Position numbers and translations under genes: made by a program. From IMG/VR virus record IMGVR_UViG_3300024239_000011, positions 186,001 to 250,000 of that record: a DNA stretch of 64,000 nucleotides. One strand, 5' to 3'. Below, piece by piece: positions 2,353-19,822 of this stretch; the stretch's first letter is position 1, and every line of letters starts with the position of its first letter. The notes under the pieces were generated by a model, which did not search any database, was not told the origin of the DNA, and worked only from the letters and a program-made list of their open reading frames with translations.

Positions 2353-3440
2353 TGTCTAGACTGTCACTATGGCGCAAACAAAAAGGTAACGATTATAATT
2401 TTATTGATCGTACATCCGCAGAACAATTCACCGTAGGCGGGGTAAGTGTCTATATCCACAAATATATAGGACCGTATACCGAGGAAGGTATAAACGAAGA
2501 AGAAGCGTTCTTAGCACCAAAAAATATAAATCAAGCCAAAGCCCCAGAGACATGGATACAGGATTTGCTTTTCATGGAGAACCGTGACCGCAAATACGAC
2601 CCACACATCTATGAACTTCGTGGACATTTCACGGTACAAGACAACGATTTCGATCTTTCACAATTTGGTCTAATGCTATCGAACGACAATATCTACATCA
2701 CGTTCCATCTAAACACAATGATCGATCAGATCGGACGAAAATTAATGTCAGGTGATGTGGTTGAACTACCAAATATGCGCGAAGATGCTATGTTAGATGA
2801 TACCGCAGATGCCATCAACAAATTCTATGTAATTGACGATGCAAACTATGCCGCCGAAGGATATAGCCCATTATGGTATCGCCATTTATGGCGTTGTACA
2901 TGTAAACCTCTTAAGGATAGCCCCGAATTTCGCGACATCCTTGGTACCGGTGAGAAGAAAGACGATCTCAAGAACCTGTTATCCACTTATGCGAAAGACA
3001 TTGCATTAAGCGATTTGTTGATAGAAGCTGCTGAAGCAGAATCACCAATGCGGAATTTTGAAACTGCCCATTTCTATGTCATCCCAGGTGATGACAGTAT
3101 TGGACGTATTCAGCAACCATCAATATGGTCGGGAGATGGCAAGCCGCCAAATGGCGCCGAACCAGTTGGGAGCGGTAAAATGTTTCCGTCCAATGCCCAT
3201 ATGGGTGATTATTTCCTGCGTACTGATTACGAACCGCACGTTCTGTACAAAAAGGAAAAGAATGGTTGGTCACCGATTGAGGTGGACTATCGCCGCACGT
3301 GGTATGCAGCCCACCGCATACTTGAATCATTTGTTGGCTCTACCGATAGCCCTGACCAAACATGGGTTGATGACAAAGGCAAAACTGTTACAGAACGACA
3401 GAATCTCAAAAAAGCGATCAAACCACGCAGTGACGTATGA
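2352..3440 (+). CDS. Neck protein (T4 gp14-like)
   Basis: MSRLSLW..KGNDY.FIDR, IQDLLFMENRDRKYD, DFDLSQFGL motifs; lies between gp13 and gp15 homologues. Confidence 0.75.
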   Translation: MSRLSLWRKQKGNDYNFIDRTSAEQFTVGGVSVYIHKYIGPYTEEGINEEEAFLAPKNINQAKAPETWIQDLLFMENRDRKYDPHIYELRGHFTVQDNDFDLSQFGLMLSNDNIYITFHLNTMIDQIGRKLMSGDVVELPNMREDAMLDDTADAINKFYVIDDANYAAEGYSPLWYRHLWRCTCKPLKDSPEFRDILGTGEKKDDLKNLLSTYAKDIALSDLLIEAAEAESPMRNFETAHFYVIPGDDSIGRIQQPSIWSGDGKPPNGAEPVGSGKMFPSNAHMGDYFLRTDYEPHVLYKKEKNGWSPIEVDYRRTWYAAHRILESFVGSTDSPDQTWVDDKGKTVTERQNLKKAIKPRSDV

Positions 3441-4329
3441 TGTCATCTACCTCGGTATAATTCTTGTCTTTCACATACACCCAGGTGTAACCAGCAGCCT
3501 CGACTAACTGTCGTTTAATGGCGGTTGTGCCTGGGTTATTTTTCTCCTGAAGTTTCTCTACATACCACGACTTGATCTCCACCACGTACTTTCCAAACAA
3601 GATAAAGTCAGCGATATAGAACACCCCAGCATCGGTAAACACAGGACCGTTCCCAATGTGATCATGGGTCAAACCGTGAATATCAAAACAGCGGGTGAGG
3701 AAATCAAGCTCATAACTGGATTGGTACAGCAGATCGGTGTCTCGAAATGGTTTTTGCTTAAAAACATTACGGTCTTTATCACTCAAAGTCTTTATCATAC
3801 TTTCAATCATTTTCTGCTTCGATTCTGGATTGAAAATAGGATTAAATTTTGAAGAGTGCATACGGTCAGATCGCCGTTTCTGATCATCCGACCCCTCATA
3901 CCGGGTATCGAAATAATCGCGAACCCGTTCGTTAAGATCAGTCGTCGCATGCTGTTTTTTCGCCTTTTCACTTAGGCGCTGACGTTCTGCATCAAACCGA
4001 TCAGAATTGCGAAAACGCCACCACCCTTCGCGTTGTTTATCCATAAAATTAGGATCATTTGCGCGCACTTGAAGGAATTCTTGACGTTTCCGTTCTTTAT
4101 CATCTTCTGTCCACATTTTCTTATATGCAGAACGCATTTCGTGAGAGATCAATGGCGCATCGGGAAACCGAGAAAGGTATTCGTCCCGTGTCGTTCCAAT
4201 CGATTTGAAATACTTGTTAGTCAGCCGCTTATACTGATTTCCAGTAAACAAACAGGTAATTACCGCTGGTGTATGATCTGGGTAAGTAATATCCACCGTT
4301 TTTGGGTCGGGACCGCCATAAATAGACAT
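3418..4329 (-). CDS. Free-standing homing-type endonuclease (C-terminal PD-(D/E)XK domain)
   Basis: YQSSYE...YIADF...VVEIKS nuclease motif with basic N-terminal DNA-binding region; antisense insertion between gp14 and gp15; ATG 4329 follows a GAGGTG RBS. Confidence 0.7.
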   Translation of the reverse strand: MSIYGGPDPKTVDITYPDHTPAVITCLFTGNQYKRLTNKYFKSIGTTRDEYLSRFPDAPLISHEMRSAYKKMWTEDDKERKRQEFLQVRANDPNFMDKQREGWWRFRNSDRFDAERQRLSEKAKKQHATTDLNERVRDYFDTRYEGSDDQKRRSDRMHSSKFNPIFNPESKQKMIESMIKTLSDKDRNVFKQKPFRDTDLLYQSSYELDFLTRCFDIHGLTHDHIGNGPVFTDAGVFYIADFILFGKYVVEIKSWYVEKLQEKNNPGTTAIKRQLVEAAGYTWVYVKDKNYTEVDDIIRHCVV

Positions 4330-4427: not shown

Positions 4428-5798
4428 GTGGCTAACCTTAATTTTTGGTATTCTGGGCAAATTAGGTCGTATATGCTTCAGTTCCTTCGCGTCTTCGCGG
4501 GGTTCCAGATCAAGACGGGGAAGGGCAAAGATGGCACCGAGACATTCATCAAGGTTCCAATTCGCTACTCGGATATGAGCCGTCAAGTTGGACATATTCT
4601 GCGTGAAAACAGCGAAAACATGATGTTATCGTGCCCGTTCATGACTGCGCATTTAACTGAAATTAGCCCTTCGGCGGAACGGCGCCAAACACCGAACCAT
4701 GTTAGTACGGTTCAAGTCACCGAACGCTATCATGACGATGGGTCAAACCAATATACCAACAAAATCGGTCAGGCATACTCAGTGGAACGTTTTATGCCGG
4801 TCCCCTACGATTTGGGCATGGAATTGAACATCTGGACATCGAACACTGACCAGAAACTTCAATTGCTTGAACAACTACTGGTTCTGTTCAACCCGTCCCT
4901 CGACCTTCAGACTTCGAACAACCCTGTGGATTGGTCCGCGTTGACCCTGATCGAGTTGGAATCAATCTCATGGTCGAGCCGCAGCATTCCGCAAGGTGCG
5001 TCGGAAGAAATCGACATAGCCACTTTGTCGTTCAAAATGCCGATATGGCTGAACCCACCGGCCAAGGTCAAGCGTCAGAAGATTATCCAACAGATCGTTA
5101 TGAACCTGATGGAGCATCCCACCATGCTAGACGCAGAACCGGGGGATATCCCGAACTGGACTGCGGACACCAAGCTCGATGCTCGGGTAGTGATCTCGCC
5201 AAATCAGTATCGCATTCGTCTCGAAGGCGATATCGTCACGCTTCTCGACTTCGCCGGAAACGAAAAGGGAGACGATGGTAAGGTATTCGAATGGTCCCCG
5301 CTTCTCGATCAGTATGGACAATACGAAGAAAGTGTATCGCAGATCGTTATTCGTACTTCGACCGACTACGATAACTTCGAGAACAATATCATTGGAACGA
5401 TCAAACTGATCCCGAACCAACCGAACAAGCTTCGGTGGACGGTCGATCCCGAAACGGTGCCGCGTGAAACCATCAAGAACATTCACGCGATCATCGACCC
5501 CCATAAGAACTACCCAGGAAAAGGTTTGCCCGCTCCATCGGTCGGTCAACGGTATCTGCTGCTTGATGAAATCGGACCCTGCGAAGCGTGGGGGAATATC
5601 GCCGCAAGTGCCAACGACATTATCGAATTCACCGGGGCACGCTGGGAGGTATATTTCAACTCAAACCAAATTCGAGAAACCCATATAGTCAAAAACTCAA
5701 ACCCAAACAGTCTAAAACACTACAAATGGAATGGACAGGAATGGGATGAATTAATCAACGGAGAATATTTCCCCGGCTCATGGCGCATCTTTCTGTAA
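4428..5798 (+). CDS. Tail completion/sheath stabiliser (T4 gp15-like) with C-terminal extension
   Basis: FWYSGQIRSY.LQF, VPIRY, MPVPYDL...IWTSNTDQKLQLLEQ.LVLFNPS; GTG start after GGAGG. Confidence 0.8.
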   Translation: MANLNFWYSGQIRSYMLQFLRVFAGFQIKTGKGKDGTETFIKVPIRYSDMSRQVGHILRENSENMMLSCPFMTAHLTEISPSAERRQTPNHVSTVQVTERYHDDGSNQYTNKIGQAYSVERFMPVPYDLGMELNIWTSNTDQKLQLLEQLLVLFNPSLDLQTSNNPVDWSALTLIELESISWSSRSIPQGASEEIDIATLSFKMPIWLNPPAKVKRQKIIQQIVMNLMEHPTMLDAEPGDIPNWTADTKLDARVVISPNQYRIRLEGDIVTLLDFAGNEKGDDGKVFEWSPLLDQYGQYEESVSQIVIRTSTDYDNFENNIIGTIKLIPNQPNKLRWTVDPETVPRETIKNIHAIIDPHKNYPGKGLPAPSVGQRYLLLDEIGPCEAWGNIAASANDIIEFTGARWEVYFNSNQIRETHIVKNSNPNSLKHYKWNGQEWDELINGEYFPGSWRIFL

Positions 5799-5803
5799 CT
5801 AAA

Positions 5804-5965
5804 CGGAACTATCGCATCAGATCAGGTAAACACCATTTGAGCGATATTCCTGTTTCAACGACACGTAGCTGATCAAGCCGTGAGCGACTTGATCCCGGCA
5901 GAGGTATCTCCACAGGCGGTGACGCCGCTAGGCGTCGGTTCGGGCATTCCTTGCCCTACCAAATA
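5804..5965 (-). ncRNA. Putative TnpB omega/reRNA scaffold
   Basis: Minus strand has GGGCAAGGAATGCCC hairpin and CGCCTGTGGAGA...TGAAACAGGAA complementarity, typical of tnpB 3' ends; boundaries approximate. Confidence 0.55.
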
Positions 5966-7048
5966 TTCAAATCCCCAACGCTTGATGTTCAAAGACGCAT
6001 TCGCGTCTCTGTCCATGACCAAACCGCAATTGGGGCAGTTGTAGGTTCGCTGGTTCAGCGGCATTTTCTGCCGATGATCACAGCAAGAACAGACCTGACT
6101 ACTGGGATCAAAGCGGTCAATTTGGACGAAATGCTTTCCCTGCCAGACCGCCTTGTAGGTGAACTGGCGTAGAATTTCGCCCCAACTGGCGTCGGCTATC
6201 GCCTTCGCCAAATTGTGGTTTCGCATCAATCCTTTGATGTTCAGGTTTTCGGCACAAATCACGCTGTAGGTCTTGGTTATCGAACTGGTGAATTTGTGGA
6301 TCAGGTCGGCTCTCTGATTTCGCACCTTGCGGTGTTGGCGGTAGAGCCGTAATTGGCATTTCTTTCGGTTCTGGCTGTCCTTACGAGCTTTGCTCAGACG
6401 GCGTTGCAAGCGGCGTAGCCGCTTCTGTGCCTTCCGCAGATGACGGGGATTGGCGACCACCTCGCCGTCACTGGTCACGACCAGTTCCTTCAGACCGAGG
6501 TCAATACCCACTGTGCTGTCCAAATCGGGAGCGATTGGCTGGTCGGGTATGTCAATCTCACAGACCACACTAATGTACCAATTATTGCCGTCTTGGCTCA
6601 CCGTGGCGGATAACGGACGCCCCTCGGGCAGCCGTCCAGCACGGAACCGCATCGATTCCATCTTTGGTAAATGGACGACATGATCACCAATGGCGAAGGA
6701 TTGGTTGGTCAAATAGAACGAATCACGTAAATTCGATTTCTTCTTGAACCGAGGGAAGCCCTTGCCGCCCTTGAAACATGCCTTCAAGGCACCATCAAGG
6801 TTTCTGGCGACCCGTTGAAGTGAACAAGCTGGTGCCGCCCCGAGCCAATCCGTCTCATTCTTCATCAACGGCAACATCTTTGCCATGTCTGCGTAAAAGA
6901 AGAATTTTTTCTCAGCCGCGTAGCGGTCTTGGTTCAGGTGGAGCAGATGGTTCCACAGCCAACGGCAATTGCCACCAAATTGCTTGAGTTGTTCGGTCTG
7001 GTTGCGAGTTGGATAAAGTCGTAGTTTGAATGCTTTCTGTGTTTTCAT
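5873..7048 (-). CDS. tnpB: RNA-guided endonuclease TnpB (IS200/IS605 OrfB family)
   Basis: KAFKLRLYPT N-terminus, GFPRFKKK, RuvC-I GIDLG, RuvC-II AENL, Zn finger CSCC..CPNCG, RuvC-III DRDANAS; catalytic D/E/D intact. Confidence 0.95.
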   Translation of the reverse strand: MKTQKAFKLRLYPTRNQTEQLKQFGGNCRWLWNHLLHLNQDRYAAEKKFFFYADMAKMLPLMKNETDWLGAAPACSLQRVARNLDGALKACFKGGKGFPRFKKKSNLRDSFYLTNQSFAIGDHVVHLPKMESMRFRAGRLPEGRPLSATVSQDGNNWYISVVCEIDIPDQPIAPDLDSTVGIDLGLKELVVTSDGEVVANPRHLRKAQKRLRRLQRRLSKARKDSQNRKKCQLRLYRQHRKVRNQRADLIHKFTSSITKTYSVICAENLNIKGLMRNHNLAKAIADASWGEILRQFTYKAVWQGKHFVQIDRFDPSSQVCSCCDHRQKMPLNQRTYNCPNCGLVMDRDANASLNIKRWGFEYLVGQGMPEPTPSGVTACGDTSAGIKSLTA

Positions 7049-7217
7049 CTGCTAAATACCAATGCGGGACAGCCCCATACATCTGCTGGGGTTTCATCGG
7101 GAGGTCGAAGGTCCGATGATTACCGCTACTTCTATTTAGCAAAAACGCTCAGTGGCAGTCGGTCAATCTATTGGGTCTACCTGATCTGATGCGATAGTCC
7201 CGTAACTAAATACGGTC

Positions 7218-7709
7218 ATGAAAATCGCATCATTATCCAAAGCTGATTGGAATCCACGCATCTACCTCGACCTAGACGGGGTGGTAGCGGACCTCCGAAA
7301 CGCCATCGAAACCAGAACCGGGCAACTACTGGAAAGTGTTTCTAAACGAACCATTCTCCAAGTAATTCTTGAGACGCCGAATTTCTGGGGAAGGTTGAAG
7401 AAAACAAATGATTGTGACGTATTATGGGAATATCTCAAGTCTCACAAACCAACTATTCTAACTGGAAAAGTCTCAGCCGATCCTCTGTGTGAAACCGGTA
7501 AACGGTTATGGGTTTTTGAAAACCTTGGAACCGAGGATGTTATTGTAACCAAAGGCGTTCTCAAACATACCTTCGGCAAACCCGGTGATATACTAATCGA
7601 TGACACGGAACGCAATATCAGATTGTGGCGTGAAATGGGTGGTATTGGAATTTTACACACCAGCGCAGCAGAAACCATTATCGAATTAAAGAAAATCGGC
7701 GTGCGTTGA
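7218..7709 (+). CDS. HAD-family 5'(3')-deoxyribonucleotidase
   Basis: YLDLDGV, ILTG, K..W, LIDD...NI..W...GGIGILH. Confidence 0.85.
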   Translation: MKIASLSKADWNPRIYLDLDGVVADLRNAIETRTGQLLESVSKRTILQVILETPNFWGRLKKTNDCDVLWEYLKSHKPTILTGKVSADPLCETGKRLWVFENLGTEDVIVTKGVLKHTFGKPGDILIDDTERNIRLWREMGGIGILHTSAAETIIELKKIGVR

Positions 7710-7761
7710 TTGACAGTGTAACAAATAATCGGTATATTCGGCTCTCTTAAACGAGGGACAA

Positions 7762-8979
7762 ATGACCTACATCACCAGTGACGAATTCCACGCCATCATT
7801 ACCCCTGCGACGGTTCGTATCAGCAAGCTGTTTGAGCAAGCTGGGTTCGACATCCGTATCGTCGGTGGAGCCGTGCGTGATTCGCTGCTCCGAGTGATGC
7901 CAAAGGATGTGGACTTCGCGACCAACGCGACCCCCGAAGAAATGATTCGGTTGATGGTTGCCGCTGATCTGTACGTGATCGGCGTCACGGAGTCCCTGCG
8001 GCGTGGTAAGACTCTGAATGAAATCATCGCGCGTATCGATGATATTCCGGGTATCCAGCATGGCACCGTGAGTGCGGTCATCAATGGTGAAACCTTCGAA
8101 ATCACCACGCTGCGATATGACATGGAAACGACCGGTCGGCATGCTAAAGTGGCATTTCATCGGTCGTTCCCGGAAGATGCCAAGCGTCGTGATTTCCGGT
8201 TCAATGCCATGTACGCCAGCATGGACGGGGAACTGCACGACTACGTTGGCGGTAAAGACGATCTCGACCAACAAGTTGTCCGGTTCGTTGGCGCCCCATC
8301 GCAGCGCATTAGAGAAGACTACCTGCGCATCTTGCGGTACTTCCGTTTTGCGGCGCGATTGGGGTTCTCCTTCGATGACGCGGCTGACGCGGCAATCGCA
8401 TACAACGTTGCGGGTCTGACGACCATCAGCGGCGAGCGCATCTGGGCGGAAATGTCCAAACTGTTCATGTATCGTGACCCGGTGAAATACCTGTTGCACA
8501 TGCATGCTCTGGGTGTAACCGAGGCAATCCAGTTGCCGGTGGATATGGATCAGGTGCGGGTGGTGTCCGAGTTCGCTACGTCGCCCGTGTCGGTACTGGC
8601 GGCATCGCTGCGTTCGGTTAGCGAGGTCGATACCCTGGCTGCCAGATGGAAGCTGAGCGGCGTTGAACGCAACTTGGCAGCATTCTTGGTGCAATATCGT
8701 GACGACCGGGTTGGGTTGCGGACTGCCCAGGATATGGTGGTCGATGGTGCCAACCACGACTTCGTTGCTGAACTACTGCGGGTCGGTGGACGTGTTGCCG
8801 AAGCGGATACGTTGGTTGGTTGGGTAACCCCCAAGTTCCCGGTTTCCGGCGCCGATCTGATGGCTTTGGGTATGAAACAAGGCAAAGAACTGGGTGATGC
8901 CTTGAAAAGCATGAAAGAACGCTGGAAACGCAGCGACTTTCAACTGTCCAAGGACGAACTGATGGCTGGCGGGGTTTAA
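7762..8979 (+). CDS. cca: Class II tRNA nucleotidyltransferase (CCA-adding enzyme)
   Basis: VGGAVRD.L....KDVDFAT, EITTLR, DAKRRDF..NA, RIREDYLRILRYFRF, ISGERIW; sigma70-like promoter TTGACA..TATATT at 7711-7738. Confidence 0.9.
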   Translation: MTYITSDEFHAIITPATVRISKLFEQAGFDIRIVGGAVRDSLLRVMPKDVDFATNATPEEMIRLMVAADLYVIGVTESLRRGKTLNEIIARIDDIPGIQHGTVSAVINGETFEITTLRYDMETTGRHAKVAFHRSFPEDAKRRDFRFNAMYASMDGELHDYVGGKDDLDQQVVRFVGAPSQRIREDYLRILRYFRFAARLGFSFDDAADAAIAYNVAGLTTISGERIWAEMSKLFMYRDPVKYLLHMHALGVTEAIQLPVDMDQVRVVSEFATSPVSVLAASLRSVSEVDTLAARWKLSGVERNLAAFLVQYRDDRVGLRTAQDMVVDGANHDFVAELLRVGGRVAEADTLVGWVTPKFPVSGADLMALGMKQGKELGDALKSMKERWKRSDFQLSKDELMAGGV

Positions 8980-8994
8980 CCCGCCAGCTTTTTT
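8965..8994 (+). terminator. Rho-independent terminator
   Basis: GCTGGCGGG-loop-CCCGCCAGC followed by T6. Confidence 0.85.
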
Positions 8995-18016: not shown

Positions 18017-19822
18017 TCAATGATGACGCCATACCCACCGCAATTTACCACAATCCCATATTCGATCAAAACCAAGTGTCTGCGCAGCAAGACTTTCAGT
18101 CATTTCAGAAGGATTGATACCAAACTTCTCCAATCTTTCCTTACGCAAGATGGATTTATGATACCTACGTTTATAATCCGTATAGTAAAAACTTGGGTCA
18201 ACATTACCATCCAGCATAAATCCAAGACGCTGGTATAGTTTCCCGGTACTGTGGCGATTATCAGAAAAAGAAACTACCGTAGTCGGGCAACATATTTCCA
18301 CAAATGTTTTGAACATTTTCGAAGCAATACCAGGGTAATGAAATCCGTTGGTTGCATATCTCACTAGTTCGTAGTCATATTCACCACGTGGATTGGTTGA
18401 GAACGCCATAACCGCTACGAGAGCATCATCATCGAAGGCACCAAAAATAGTGCCTACGGCAATACCACTCCCTTGTAAATGATGCTTATCTAAAAACTTA
18501 GCAGCAGACGCCCATTCTATCTTGGATATCTCTAATTGTCTTGCCCCGACACCCCGTGGGGCATGTCCAATTAAATGATGTATGCGGCTACGAACTACGT
18601 CATTATTTAGAACCCACTCATCACCGAATATCGTCAGGAGCGAAATTCCTTTTTCATTACATTGGCGCCATTTATCATAGTGATAAAAAGCGTTAGGGCG
18701 CCCCCGCTCGGACCATTGGCTATGAAAATACAACCCGCACATTTCAATCGCCAATGCCAAGTCAGGTAGATAAAAGTCTAGCTCACCCTTAATAATGGTT
18801 TGAGTATTCTTCTTGTAATTTATTCCAGCGTTATCAAGAATACGCTGCATAGCCGTTTCATATCCAGACCGCCCCGGTCGTTCGATCTCATACCGATCCA
18901 TATAGCGTCCAATGGTTCTGTCATTGACCTCCAACTTGACGGCAAGCTCGGATATCGAATACACCTCACAAAGTTGTTCGAACGCTTCTTTGTTTTGAAG
19001 GATATCGTATGCAACTGTAGACATTTGTCCCTGTACCCAATTCGAACGCCCATACCTGTTCAAATAGGTTTGGATACGCTTTGCTTTTACCACATCAGAT
19101 TTTAGAGGATGATCTACCCCTATAGTCGCAACCAAGATATCACGTATCTGCTGCTGAATGACAGGATTGGAAAAAGGGTTATCATATCCTGTTTGTTCGG
19201 TATACGCGGCACGAGCAATGTGCATGGCACTATCAGAACTATACCGATCTTGGCATGTTTGCTTGATTTTCTCTTTCACTTCATCCAATTGGGTATGCCA
19301 TTCCACCCCATATCGTATCAAATTGTTTAGCTTAGTGTTTTCCTTAACCTCTGCTGCCTGGGTATGCCACTCCACCCCATATTTTGCCAGATTTTGCTTT
19401 CGCAATCGGCATTTCACGTCATCTACCATCATGGCGTTTTCTACCCCATAACGCTCGATACAAGTAGAACGCATTTTATCTACAACAGCAGCTTTTTGTT
19501 GATCACTCTGCAAACTATGAAAATTAGATAGTTTATTGGATTGGTTCTCGCGGTTGCAAGAACATTCAACTTTGCTGCCGCAAAACCGAAACCCTTTATC
19601 AAGTGTATTGAATTTTTTACGGTTACCGTTCTTGCAGAATGGCGTCTCATCATGGAGTACAAGATAAACCATTTCGGGTATTGTCAAATCAATACCCCAT
19701 TTTTTGGTTTCTTGATACAACCATGCAAGCAATATCTTGTTTTGATTTATAGAACGCGCATAACCACGTTTTTGACTTAGATTTTTTACGACATCACGCA
19801 TAGTCGAATCCGAATCTCTCAA
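18017..19822 (-). CDS. Hef-like free-standing homing endonuclease (YGVE repeats, Vsr/PD-(D/E)XK nuclease, GNAT-like C-terminal domain)
   Basis: Repeated (K/R)YGVE..Q..VKE units; ELDFYLP..LAIE..G.YFHS...H..K...C...GI.L.TIF.DEW; FL..HHLQG...YELVRY...SFSD.R...G.LY..LGF; AT-rich; start may be ATG 19801. Confidence 0.75.
   Translation of the reverse strand: MRDSDSTMRDVVKNLSQKRGYARSINQNKILLAWLYQETKKWGIDLTIPEMVYLVLHDETPFCKNGNRKKFNTLDKGFRFCGSKVECSCNRENQSNKLSNFHSLQSDQQKAAVVDKMRSTCIERYGVENAMMVDDVKCRLRKQNLAKYGVEWHTQAAEVKENTKLNNLIRYGVEWHTQLDEVKEKIKQTCQDRYSSDSAMHIARAAYTEQTGYDNPFSNPVIQQQIRDILVATIGVDHPLKSDVVKAKRIQTYLNRYGRSNWVQGQMSTVAYDILQNKEAFEQLCEVYSISELAVKLEVNDRTIGRYMDRYEIERPGRSGYETAMQRILDNAGINYKKNTQTIIKGELDFYLPDLALAIEMCGLYFHSQWSERGRPNAFYHYDKWRQCNEKGISLLTIFGDEWVLNNDVVRSRIHHLIGHAPRGVGARQLEISKIEWASAAKFLDKHHLQGSGIAVGTIFGAFDDDALVAVMAFSTNPRGEYDYELVRYATNGFHYPGIASKMFKTFVEICCPTTVVSFSDNRHSTGKLYQRLGFMLDGNVDPSFYYTDYKRRYHKSILRKERLEKFGINPSEMTESLAAQTLGFDRIWDCGKLRWVWRHH

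What the first reader, a model, noticed from the sequence alone, without database searches (positions are those of the whole stretch)
5796..7210. Intact TnpB packaged between 28-bp TIRs and an 8-bp target duplication
Seen: CGGAACTATCGCATCAGATCAGGTAAAC (5804-5831) and its inverse (7175-7202, 26/28), flanked by TAACTAAA on both sides. Removing the element restores the gp15 stop joined to the CTAAATAC late promoter of the next gene. Established: IS200/IS605 and IS607 elements have no TIRs and make no TSD; TIRs with an 8-bp AT-rich TSD mark DDE transposons such as IS1595. Inference: TnpB has been captured by a DDE-mobilised non-autonomous element, as eukaryotic Fanzors were. The omegaRNA would run through the TIR. 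If the guide is the flank (TTTAGTTACAGAAAG..., minus), the empty allele has a different upstream pentamer (CCGTA versus TTCCG), allowing self/non-self discrimination and homing between phages. Both TIR mismatches would be G-U pairs in the tnpB-sense RNA.
Basis: partly seen in the sequence, partly recalled or inferred. Interest (0 to 1): 0.85.

Follow-up and report, generated by a model that had tools for sequence, protein, structure and literature searches.

The report
TnpB cassette of a phage IS1595 transposon
A huge T4-like phage carries a 1.4-kb mobile cassette: an intact RNA-guided nuclease gene (tnpB) inside the inverted-repeat ends of an IS1595-type cut-and-paste transposon whose transposase has been deleted, and one of those ends also appears to be the last part of the nuclease's guide-RNA scaffold.

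Summary
A 28-nt inverted repeat (26/28) lies at 5804-5831 and 7175-7202, flanked by TAACTAAA on both sides, and encloses an intact 391-aa tnpB on the minus strand.

A sibling copy 130 kb away in the same 543-kb phage contig has the same ends. It also has a 305-aa IS1595-family DDE transposase just upstream of tnpB. Full transposase + tnpB units recur in three other metagenome contig sets. Four independent insertions have perfect AT-rich 8-bp duplications. Six copies, the window's among them, are independent internal deletions that lost the transposase but kept tnpB.

TnpB looks active: the RuvC D/E/D residues and zinc finger are kept, and dN/dS is about 0.1. A covariation-supported RNA fold matches the published ISDra2 omegaRNA layout. 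Its last hairpin and pseudoknot strand are made of the tnpB-proximal inverted repeat, so the scaffold ends at the element's last base and the guide should be the flank.

Homing into empty alleles is inferred, not shown; no empty allele was found.

TnpB linked to DDE transposases within inverted repeats was reported in 2023. The IS1595 partner, the huge-phage setting and the double-duty repeat are the new parts.

The parts
5796..5803 (.). Left copy of the 8-bp target-site duplication TAACTAAA; its first three bases are the gp15 stop codon
   Evidence: native stop position confirmed with L183
5804..5836 (-). tnpB-proximal terminal inverted repeat (TIR-R in tnpB sense). It is both the transposon end and the predicted stem 4 3' strand (5815-5810), stem 4 loop, and pseudoknot 3' strand (5808-5805) of the omegaRNA
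5804..5960 (-). Predicted omegaRNA scaffold, 157 nt, read 5960 to 5804. It overlaps the last 88 nt of tnpB and the 69-nt tail down to the last base of the element
   Evidence: alignment A4 of 10 family members; 48 pairs, 96.8% paired, 15 with compensatory change, 0/500 shuffles; coordinates
5784..5803 (-). Predicted guide region (flank: duplication plus the last gp15 codons), read 5803 downwards as TTTAGTTACAGAAAGATGCG
   Evidence: inference from the scaffold ending at 5804 and the ISDra2 layout (PMC10097598); not measured
5873..7048 (-). tnpB, 391 aa, intact; RuvC D183/E267/D348 and CxxC...CxxC zinc finger conserved
   Evidence: closest solved natural structure is ISDra2 TnpB at 6.9e-69; dN/dS 0.08-0.13
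7050..7141 (-). Conserved structured element just upstream of the tnpB start: outer stem, inner stem and two hairpins. Its 5' strand reads GCTAAATAG. Function unknown
   Evidence: 28 pairs, 13 with compensatory change; coordinates
7144..7153 (-). Remnant around the stop codon of the deleted IS1595 transposase gene (ACTGAGCGTT); the deletion junction is just outside it
   Evidence: compared with full copies L002, L011 and with copy C2
7170..7202 (-). Transposase-side terminal inverted repeat (TIR-L in tnpB sense); with 7154-7169 it is homologous to the left-end leader of the full element
7203..7210 (.). Right copy of the 8-bp target-site duplication TAACTAAA

Best explanation
The element at 5804-7202 is a transposase-less internal-deletion derivative (a mobile insertion cassette) of a composite insertion sequence. 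The full unit reads: inverted repeat, IS1595-family DDE transposase, structured leader, tnpB with its omegaRNA, inverted repeat.

Shown:
- The full autonomous form exists in the same phage genome and in other phage contigs.
- Insertions make 8-bp AT-rich duplications.
- Deletion derivatives arose repeatedly and always keep tnpB.
- TnpB is under purifying selection with an intact active site.
- A conserved RNA fold spans the tnpB 3' end and the adjacent inverted repeat.

Inferred mechanism:
- The IS1595 transposase, supplied in trans by the full copy at about 60 kb of the contig, binds both repeats and moves the cassette by DDE transposition.
- The tnpB transcript is processed into an omegaRNA. 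Its stem 4 and pseudoknot 3' strand are the RNA copy of the tnpB-proximal repeat.
- The scaffold therefore ends at the transposon's last base, and the next 16-20 nt (duplication plus flank) become the guide.
- TnpB then cuts genome copies that have the uninterrupted site, where a TAM precedes the target. The occupied site is spared because ...TTCCG precedes the same sequence there.
- The phage's own recombination repair then copies the cassette in. This gives homing or retention among co-replicating and co-infecting phage genomes.

The repeat is thus under two constraints, transposase binding and RNA folding. That fits its near-invariance while TnpB diverged to about 67% identity (L014) and synonymous sites were saturated in that comparison.
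For: Anatomy and chance.

Transposase in the sibling copy: DDE_Tnp_IS1595 7.7e-41 plus Zn ribbon, co-linear with the window copy.

Other copies: a third copy on another 326-kb contig has an independent deletion and a perfect TAATAAAT duplication. Full transposase + tnpB units occur in L011/L012, L014 and L177, with 99-100 nt between the genes. All have the same repeat core, with at most 3 differences in 25. The four measured deletions have different sizes, 968, 858, 890 and 543 bp.

No close relatives in 185,579 species genomes (37% at most). The relatives whose context could be judged lie on phage-like contigs.

Active-site residues are invariant. The closest solved natural structure is ISDra2 TnpB, 6.9e-69. 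dN/dS is 0.08-0.13 with dS 0.64-1.0.

RNA fold. It matches the published ISDra2 order of stem 1 with coaxial pseudoknot, stems 2 and 3, stem 4, pseudoknot 3' strand at -6 to -2, then the guide (PMC10097598).

Pseudoknot partner tracks the hairpin loop in four states: GGAA/TTCC, GGAC/GTCC (L177), GGCTA/TAGCC (L020) and ATGCC/GGCAT (L022). It always lies 25-47 nt after the core motif.

The phage encodes an SbcC/gp46-like recombination nuclease and a homing endonuclease.

Altae-Tran et al. 2023 found inverted terminal repeats around all six DDE-associated TnpB branches, and a TnpB 3' end within 250 bp of the transposon end in most examined cases (PMC10691335).
Against: No RNA data: the omegaRNA ends, the guide and the TAM are all predicted.

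The pseudoknot covariation inside the IS1595 family rests on one lineage (L177). The L020 and L022 support comes from 5-nt matches that each have a few percent chance of arising by accident.

Stem 4 covaries with a sequence that is also mirrored in the other repeat, so a DNA-level cause is not fully excluded.

No empty allele of this site was found in 8 samples, so homing has no population evidence here.

Three copies (L002, L010, L013) and L177 lack a duplication.

Cut-and-paste excision already leaves a break. That is one published explanation for why DDE transposons rarely carry TnpB, since the nuclease would add little (PMC13565253).

The deletion in the window copy could have happened in place after insertion, so mobilisation in trans is not proven for this copy.
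Confidence: 0.72

Rival explanations
1. Nested insertion with a fixed guide. An IS1341-type tnpB-only element once inserted just inside the right end of an IS1595 element. Its scaffold ends near 5837-5846, and its guide is the inner part of the inverted repeat (ATGGTGTTTACC...). TnpB would then home only into IS1595 copies that lack it.
For: Strict sequence similarity of the scaffold to TnpB relatives without IS1595 (L020, L022) stops at the core motif GAAnCrGGAA. The sequence after it differs between subfamilies and coincides with the inner edge of the repeat. A TCAA-like motif follows the core in the window and in L020. The association must have begun with some capture event of this kind.
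Against: The region after the core is paired (stem 4), including G-U compatible changes that only work in the tnpB-sense RNA. The hairpin-loop complement needed for the pseudoknot lies at the very tip of the repeat, not before it, and it changes with the loop in L177. L020 and L022 also have a hairpin plus loop complement after the core, so the canonical scaffold does not end at the core either. No copies with these repeats lack tnpB. Six transposase-deleted copies keep an intact tnpB, although most lack the left homology that such homing would need. The proposed left junction at about 7162 is transposase-leader sequence.
Confidence: 0.12
2. TnpB is a passenger with a role other than homing. 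It could be a phage weapon or regulator whose guide is irrelevant to the element's spread, or a cargo that is still intact only because capture was recent.
For: No empty allele and no target were found. Nuclease-dead TnpB relatives that act as RNA-guided transcription factors are known (PMC13622181, listed). A conserved structured leader of unknown function precedes tnpB.
Against: The catalytic D/E/D residues and zinc finger are invariant. dN/dS is about 0.1 over dS up to saturation, so the gene has been maintained for a long time. tnpB is retained in every deletion derivative while the transposase is lost. The scaffold is conserved with compensatory changes right up to the element's last base.
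Confidence: 0.1
3. The inverted repeats and direct repeat are a chance or assembly artefact around an ordinary IS200/IS605-type tnpB.
For: None beyond the general rule that IS200/IS605 elements lack such ends.
Against: There were 0 chance matches in shuffles. The same ends occur in independent assemblies from many samples. An IS1595 transposase sits inside the same ends. Four independent 8-bp duplications exist.
Confidence: 0.01

Closest known systems
DDE-transposase-associated TnpB branches (DDE-1 to DDE-6) of Altae-Tran et al. 2023, PNAS (PMC10691335)
   Same: TnpB sits inside a transposon bounded by inverted terminal repeats together with a DDE transposase. Solo TnpB copies are flanked by near-identical ends. 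The TnpB 3' end lies close to the transposon end (69 nt here), which implies that the guide is taken from the flank.
   Different: The families named for those branches are IS630 (main text) and ISL2, IS630 and IS1031 (review PMC13565253). IS1595 does not appear in the main text; the supplement was not available. No paper in the library treats IS1595 and TnpB as one unit. Here the family is seen on huge-phage and other phage-like contigs and in no bacterial or archaeal species genome, and the repeat can be assigned to specific omegaRNA helices.
IS1595 family insertion sequences, including their passenger-carrying forms and transposase-less cassettes
   Same: A DDE_Tnp_IS1595 transposase with an N-terminal zinc ribbon, terminal inverted repeats and 8-bp duplications. 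That this family makes 8-bp duplications, and that some members carry passenger genes, is from my own knowledge of ISfinder and Siguier et al. 2009, not checked here.
   Different: The passenger is an RNA-guided nuclease whose RNA scaffold shares sequence with the transposon end. The window copy has no transposase.
ISDra2 (IS200/IS605) TnpB-omegaRNA
   Same: It is the closest solved natural protein (6.9e-69) and has the same catalytic residues. The predicted RNA has the same order of stems, pseudoknot and guide.
   Different: ISDra2 has no inverted repeats and no duplication, and it moves by a Y1 TnpA with scarless excision. Here stem 4 has a roughly 33-nt loop holding the inner repeat, and mobility is by a DDE enzyme.
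Eukaryotic Fanzor in DDE transposons (Bao and Jurka 2013, PMC3627910)
   Same: A TnpB-family nuclease carried as cargo between the inverted repeats of DDE transposons.
   Different: Fanzors are eukaryotic or giant-virus proteins with added domains. This is a compact prokaryotic-type TnpB in a bacteriophage. No descent relationship was tested.

Membership tests
IS1595 family (DDE transposon) | Encodes a DDE_Tnp_IS1595 transposase with an N-terminal zinc ribbon | tested here: not met
   The window copy has no transposase ORF, only about 10 nt around its stop codon. Sibling copies with the same ends do encode it. The window copy is therefore a non-autonomous derivative, not an autonomous member.
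IS1595 family (DDE transposon) | Terminal inverted repeats | tested here: met
   28 nt at 26/28, extending to 34 nt at 88%. The same core is present in 10 copies.
IS1595 family (DDE transposon) | 8-bp target-site duplication | tested here: met
   TAACTAAA in the window. TAATAAAT, TCAAGAAA and TAATTATA are found at three other independent sites. Four copies lack one.
IS200/IS605 family, IS1341 group (tnpB-only) | No terminal inverted repeats and no target-site duplication; asymmetric ends with subterminal hairpins used by a Y1 TnpA | tested here: not met
   The element has both inverted repeats and a duplication. No Y1 transposase was seen in any related locus examined.
TnpB / OMEGA RNA-guided nuclease | RuvC-like D, E, D catalytic residues and a zinc finger | tested here: met
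   D183, E267, D348 and C320/C323/C338/C341 are invariant in 11 relatives. The Pfam domains OrfB_IS605, Cas12f1-like_TNB and HTH_OrfB_IS605 are present.
TnpB / OMEGA RNA-guided nuclease | Structured omegaRNA overlapping the 3' end of tnpB and ending at the transposon end | tested here: met
   48-pair fold, 96.8% paired, 15 compensatory pairs, 0/500 shuffles, slid controls at most 42%. The pseudoknot partner lies at bases 2-5 from the element tip. This is a prediction from sequence only.
TnpB / OMEGA RNA-guided nuclease | Guide taken from the flank, and TAM-dependent DNA cleavage | not testable with these tools
   Seven of eight left flanks end in TA just before the duplication position (reading), against three of eight on the right. 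This is suggestive only.
DDE-associated TnpB (Altae-Tran 2023) | TnpB and a DDE transposase inside one pair of inverted terminal repeats, with the TnpB 3' end within 250 bp of the end | tested here: met
   Met by the full copies L002, L011, L014 and L177. The distance from stop codon to element end is 69 nt.
Fanzor | Eukaryotic or eukaryotic-virus host, with Fanzor-specific extensions | tested here: not met
   The host genome is a T4-like phage with portal, gp15 and gp46-like genes. The protein is 391 aa and closest to ISDra2 TnpB.

The most novel reading that the evidence does not exclude
This would be a co-evolved fusion of two unrelated mobility systems, seen so far only on phage contigs, several of them huge. 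One 30-odd-nt sequence is at once the binding end for an IS1595 (Merlin-related) DDE transposase and stem 4 plus the pseudoknot strand of a TnpB omegaRNA. Every new insertion would then automatically reprogram the nuclease against the empty version of its own site. That would turn a cut-and-paste transposon, and even its transposase-less deletion derivatives, into self-retargeting homing elements that spread through phage populations.
Probability: 0.45. Interest if true: 0.75.

Novelty: new variant of a known kind. Interest (0 to 1): 0.6.

Why it matters
TnpB is the ancestor of Cas12. Its known biology is tied to IS200/IS605 and IS607, whose scarless excision explains why a flank-derived guide helps the transposon.

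How and why TnpB works inside cut-and-paste DDE transposons is an open question. The arrangement is rare in prokaryotes and common for eukaryotic Fanzors.

This family offers a compact, testable case:
- A full element and several natural deletion derivatives are available.
- The scaffold is close to the well-studied ISDra2.
- There is a specific prediction that the transposon end doubles as RNA scaffold.
- The phage host has its own recombination machinery, so homing can be measured.

It also shows that the huge phages sampled here carry their own insertion-sequence family.

Tried and rejected
- DNA searches of the annotated phage collection with the locus and with the element found nothing.
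- Rfam at a permissive threshold gave no relevant family for 5000-8000.
- Scans for the repeat in IMG/VR and in JGI metagenomes found only three copies, all with tnpB, and no MITE-only or other-cargo copies. A scan for the conserved scaffold core added none.
- The transposase found only itself in IMG/VR.
- Species genomes hold no TnpB relative above 37% identity, so no host could be named.
- Empty alleles were sought through a gp15 relative, which at 35% identity was too distant for DNA comparison. They were also sought through exact-protein look-ups of both flanking genes, which returned only occupied sites. Several contigs end at the repeat or in the tnpB leader, as expected for a repeated element.
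- I tried to fix the canonical right-end boundary from multi-copy relatives. The L100 group turned out to be a different, IS607-like architecture, and plasmid relatives were at most 40% identical. Both routes were dropped.
- My first idea was that GGAA in the motif CAGGAAT pairs with the repeat tip. I rejected it because L177 changes the hairpin loop, not that motif.
- L142 is a distant IS1595 + TnpB pair. Its ends and duplication could not be defined, and its ORF runs almost to the putative end.
- The sigma-70 and terminator scan of the element gave nothing above chance.
- The supplement of the 2023 classification paper was not available, so I could not check whether one of its DDE branches is IS1595.
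Full report
**1. The observation**

The window between 5796 and 7210 reads as described. In order it holds:
- TAACTAAA;
- a 28-nt terminal sequence at 5804-5831;
- a minus-strand ORF of 391 aa at 5873-7048;
- the inverse of the terminal sequence at 7175-7202, with two mismatches;
- TAACTAAA again.

With up to three mismatches the terminal sequence occurs only at these two places in 64 kb, and never in 100 shuffles. The repeat finder extends the pair to 34 nt at 88%. The ORF carries HTH_OrfB_IS605, OrfB_IS605 and Cas12f1-like_TNB.

The upstream gene is a T4 gp15-type tail sheath stabiliser. Its stop codon is the TAA of the left duplication. A distant gp15 in another huge phage ends at the homologous residue, so the insertion did not truncate it.

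**2. What the ends belong to**

The window lies in a 543,035-bp IMG/VR contig. About 130 kb away the same contig has a second element with the same ends (L002:448-2956). Between its left end and its tnpB (85% protein identity) sits a 305-aa ORF with DDE_Tnp_IS1595 (7.7e-41) and Zn_ribbon_IS1595.

The alignment of the two elements shows what the window copy keeps:
- about 50 nt of the left end;
- about 10 nt around the transposase stop codon;
- everything from the tnpB leader to the right end.

It lacks only the transposase gene.

A third copy sits on a 326-kb contig of the same metagenome. It keeps the last 100 nt or so of the transposase gene, so its deletion was independent, and it has a perfect TAATAAAT duplication.

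**3. A family, not a one-off**

Protein searches and context look-ups found further copies.
- Full units: L011/L012 (transposase 96%, TnpB 85-88% identical to the copies here), L177 (78% / 75%, next to a T4 rIIB gene) and L014 (83% / 66-67%). Each has 99-100 nt between the two genes.
- Deleted copies: L010, L013, L017 and L099. L099 lies in a 457-kb phage contig.

The repeat core differs by at most 3 of 25 bases in the window-type copies. The 59-62% subfamily (L017, L099) keeps the outermost 12 bases and changes the rest.

Perfect 8-bp duplications flank four independent insertions. Four copies have none. The four measured deletions have different sizes.

No bacterial or archaeal species genome has a TnpB above 37% identity. 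A more distant IS1595 + TnpB pair (42% / 37%) exists in a GC-rich viral contig, L142.

The window itself encodes a portal protein, virion proteins, an SbcC/gp46-like nuclease, a homing endonuclease and NAD synthetase, so the host genome is a phage.

**4. Is TnpB functional?**

The RuvC D, E, D residues and both CxxC pairs are invariant. ISDra2 TnpB is the closest natural solved structure (6.9e-69). Outside the RNA overlap, dN/dS is 0.08-0.13 for every pair. Within the 85% group dS is 0.64-1.0, and it is saturated beyond that group. The repeat stayed nearly constant over the same divergence.

**5. Where the guide comes from**

I aligned ten copies, from 150 nt inside tnpB to 25 nt past the element. 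RNAalifold and an explicit pair count support a 157-nt fold:
- 48 pairs, 96.8% of cells paired;
- 15 pairs with compensatory change;
- no shuffle out of 500 as good;
- at most 42% paired when partners are slid.

Its order matches the ISDra2 omegaRNA as described by Nakagawa et al. (PMC10097598):
- a first hairpin, on which a pseudoknot stacks;
- a long-range stem (CCUGUGG with ...CAGG);
- an internal stem with a variable hairpin;
- a last hairpin (stem 4);
- a short pseudoknot strand, one unpaired base, and then the guide.

In this family the 3' strand of stem 4 is GCGAUA inside the repeat (5815-5810). The stem 4 loop is the inner repeat. The pseudoknot strand UUCC is bases 2-5 from the element's tip (5808-5805) and pairs with the loop GGAA of the first hairpin (5950-5947, inside the codons for GQGMPE).

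L177 has GGAC in the loop and GUCC at the tip, which also changes Met to Leu in the protein. Two relatives that have no IS1595 and no repeats show the same rule with other sequences: GGCUA with UAGCC in L020, and AUGCC with GGCAU in L022. In all lineages the partner lies 25-47 nt after the conserved core motif.

The scaffold therefore ends at 5804, and the guide should be the flank, read from 5803 downwards.

- In an empty site the guide-matching sequence is preceded by ...CCGTA.
- In the occupied site it is preceded by ...TTCCG.

Across eight left flanks, seven have TA at the two bases before the duplication position, against three of eight on the other side (my reading). This is a candidate TAM, or a transposase target preference. 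The difference between the two sides is not significant.

**6. Mechanism and rivals**

The best-supported account has these steps:
- DDE transposition by the IS1595 enzyme, in trans for the window copy.
- Automatic capture of the new flank as the guide, because the repeat is the end of the scaffold.
- TnpB cleavage of uninterrupted alleles, followed by recombinational copying.

The anatomy, the family and the fold are shown. RNA ends, TAM, cleavage and homing are inferred.

The nested-IS1341 model with a repeat-derived fixed guide is disfavoured for four reasons:
- The region it needs as a guide is paired.
- The pseudoknot partner lies at the tip of the repeat.
- No tnpB-less copies with these repeats were found.
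- tnpB survives in deletion derivatives that could not home that way.

No empty allele was found. The site is occupied wherever contigs reach it, in at least 8 samples.

**7. Comparison with what is known**

Altae-Tran et al. 2023 reported six DDE-associated TnpB branches, all with inverted terminal repeats. They also found solo TnpBs inside near-identical ends, and a short distance from TnpB to the transposon end in most examined cases. A 2026 review names ISL2, IS630 and IS1031 as the partner families.

No paper in the library links IS1595 with TnpB as one element, and none describes this in huge phages. The supplement that would settle the branch identity was not available.

I therefore rate this as a new variant of a known kind. 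The partner transposase family, the phage restriction and the helix-level assignment of the repeat are new. The general principle is not.

Noticed in passing
window 7050-7141 (minus strand): A roughly 90-nt conserved structured element lies directly upstream of the tnpB start codon: an outer stem, an inner stem and two hairpins. 13 of its 28 pairs show compensatory change across ten copies. Its outer 5' strand reads GCTAAATAG (GATAAATAAA in the distant subfamily), like a T4-type late promoter, and the 3' strand is its inverse. It is absent from TnpB relatives without IS1595 (L020, L022) and has no Rfam match. Function unknown.
   Followed up: partly
L002:440-2970 (contig position about 59.9-62.5 kb): The full transposase + tnpB copy has no target-site duplication (TTTTCAAA against TTGGTCTA). 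It interrupts a 140-aa ORF with a weak dual-specificity-phosphatase match, and that reading frame continues for 32 codons on the far side. It also has a 145-nt insert with a 21-nt direct repeat between the transposase stop and the tnpB leader.
   Followed up: partly
L186:1, L187:1, L188:1, L189:1: In four other samples the assembled contig of this phage stops exactly at the outer edge of the repeat (G + TAACTAAA...) or inside the conserved tnpB leader. This is the pattern expected where a multi-copy element breaks a short-read assembly.
   Followed up: yes
window 1862, 7207, 11257, 43065, 51766, 58216 (+); 4363, 1092 (-): TAAATAC occurs 16 times against about 9 expected, and half of these lie 11-40 nt upstream of an ORF of at least 80 aa. 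All four insertion sites with duplications sit on similar AT-rich motifs (...ATAC after the duplication). The element may prefer late-promoter-like sequence.
   Followed up: partly
window 18017-19822 (minus strand): A 601-aa ORF matches PHROG homing endonuclease / HNH families (4.2e-97). It is a second kind of selfish nuclease in the same window.
   Followed up: no
L005:760-1208: On the 326-kb contig, just past the third copy, a gyrase-A-like ORF reads ...PPAAMRY and then CVTGDTRVWVDG... This looks like an intein at the classic GyrA site. It was read by eye and not tested.
   Followed up: no
L010:856-2545 and 2800-3633, 8152-8988: The 104-kb contig holding the 86%-identical tnpB-only copy has FlaF, FlbT and a flagellin C-terminal-domain gene next to two QueC genes. 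This is unusual cargo for a phage, or a hint at an alphaproteobacterial host.
   Followed up: no
L142:3075-5233: A GC-rich 107-kb viral contig has an IS1595 transposase (42% identity) immediately upstream of a TnpB (37% identity). The pairing therefore recurs at great distance or arose twice. Its ends could not be fixed.
   Followed up: partly
L022:4200-4225: In a 52%-identical phage TnpB without IS1595, the predicted scaffold end falls about 10 nt inside the next gene (an HNH endonuclease). The start codon of that gene would then be supplied by the element.
   Followed up: no
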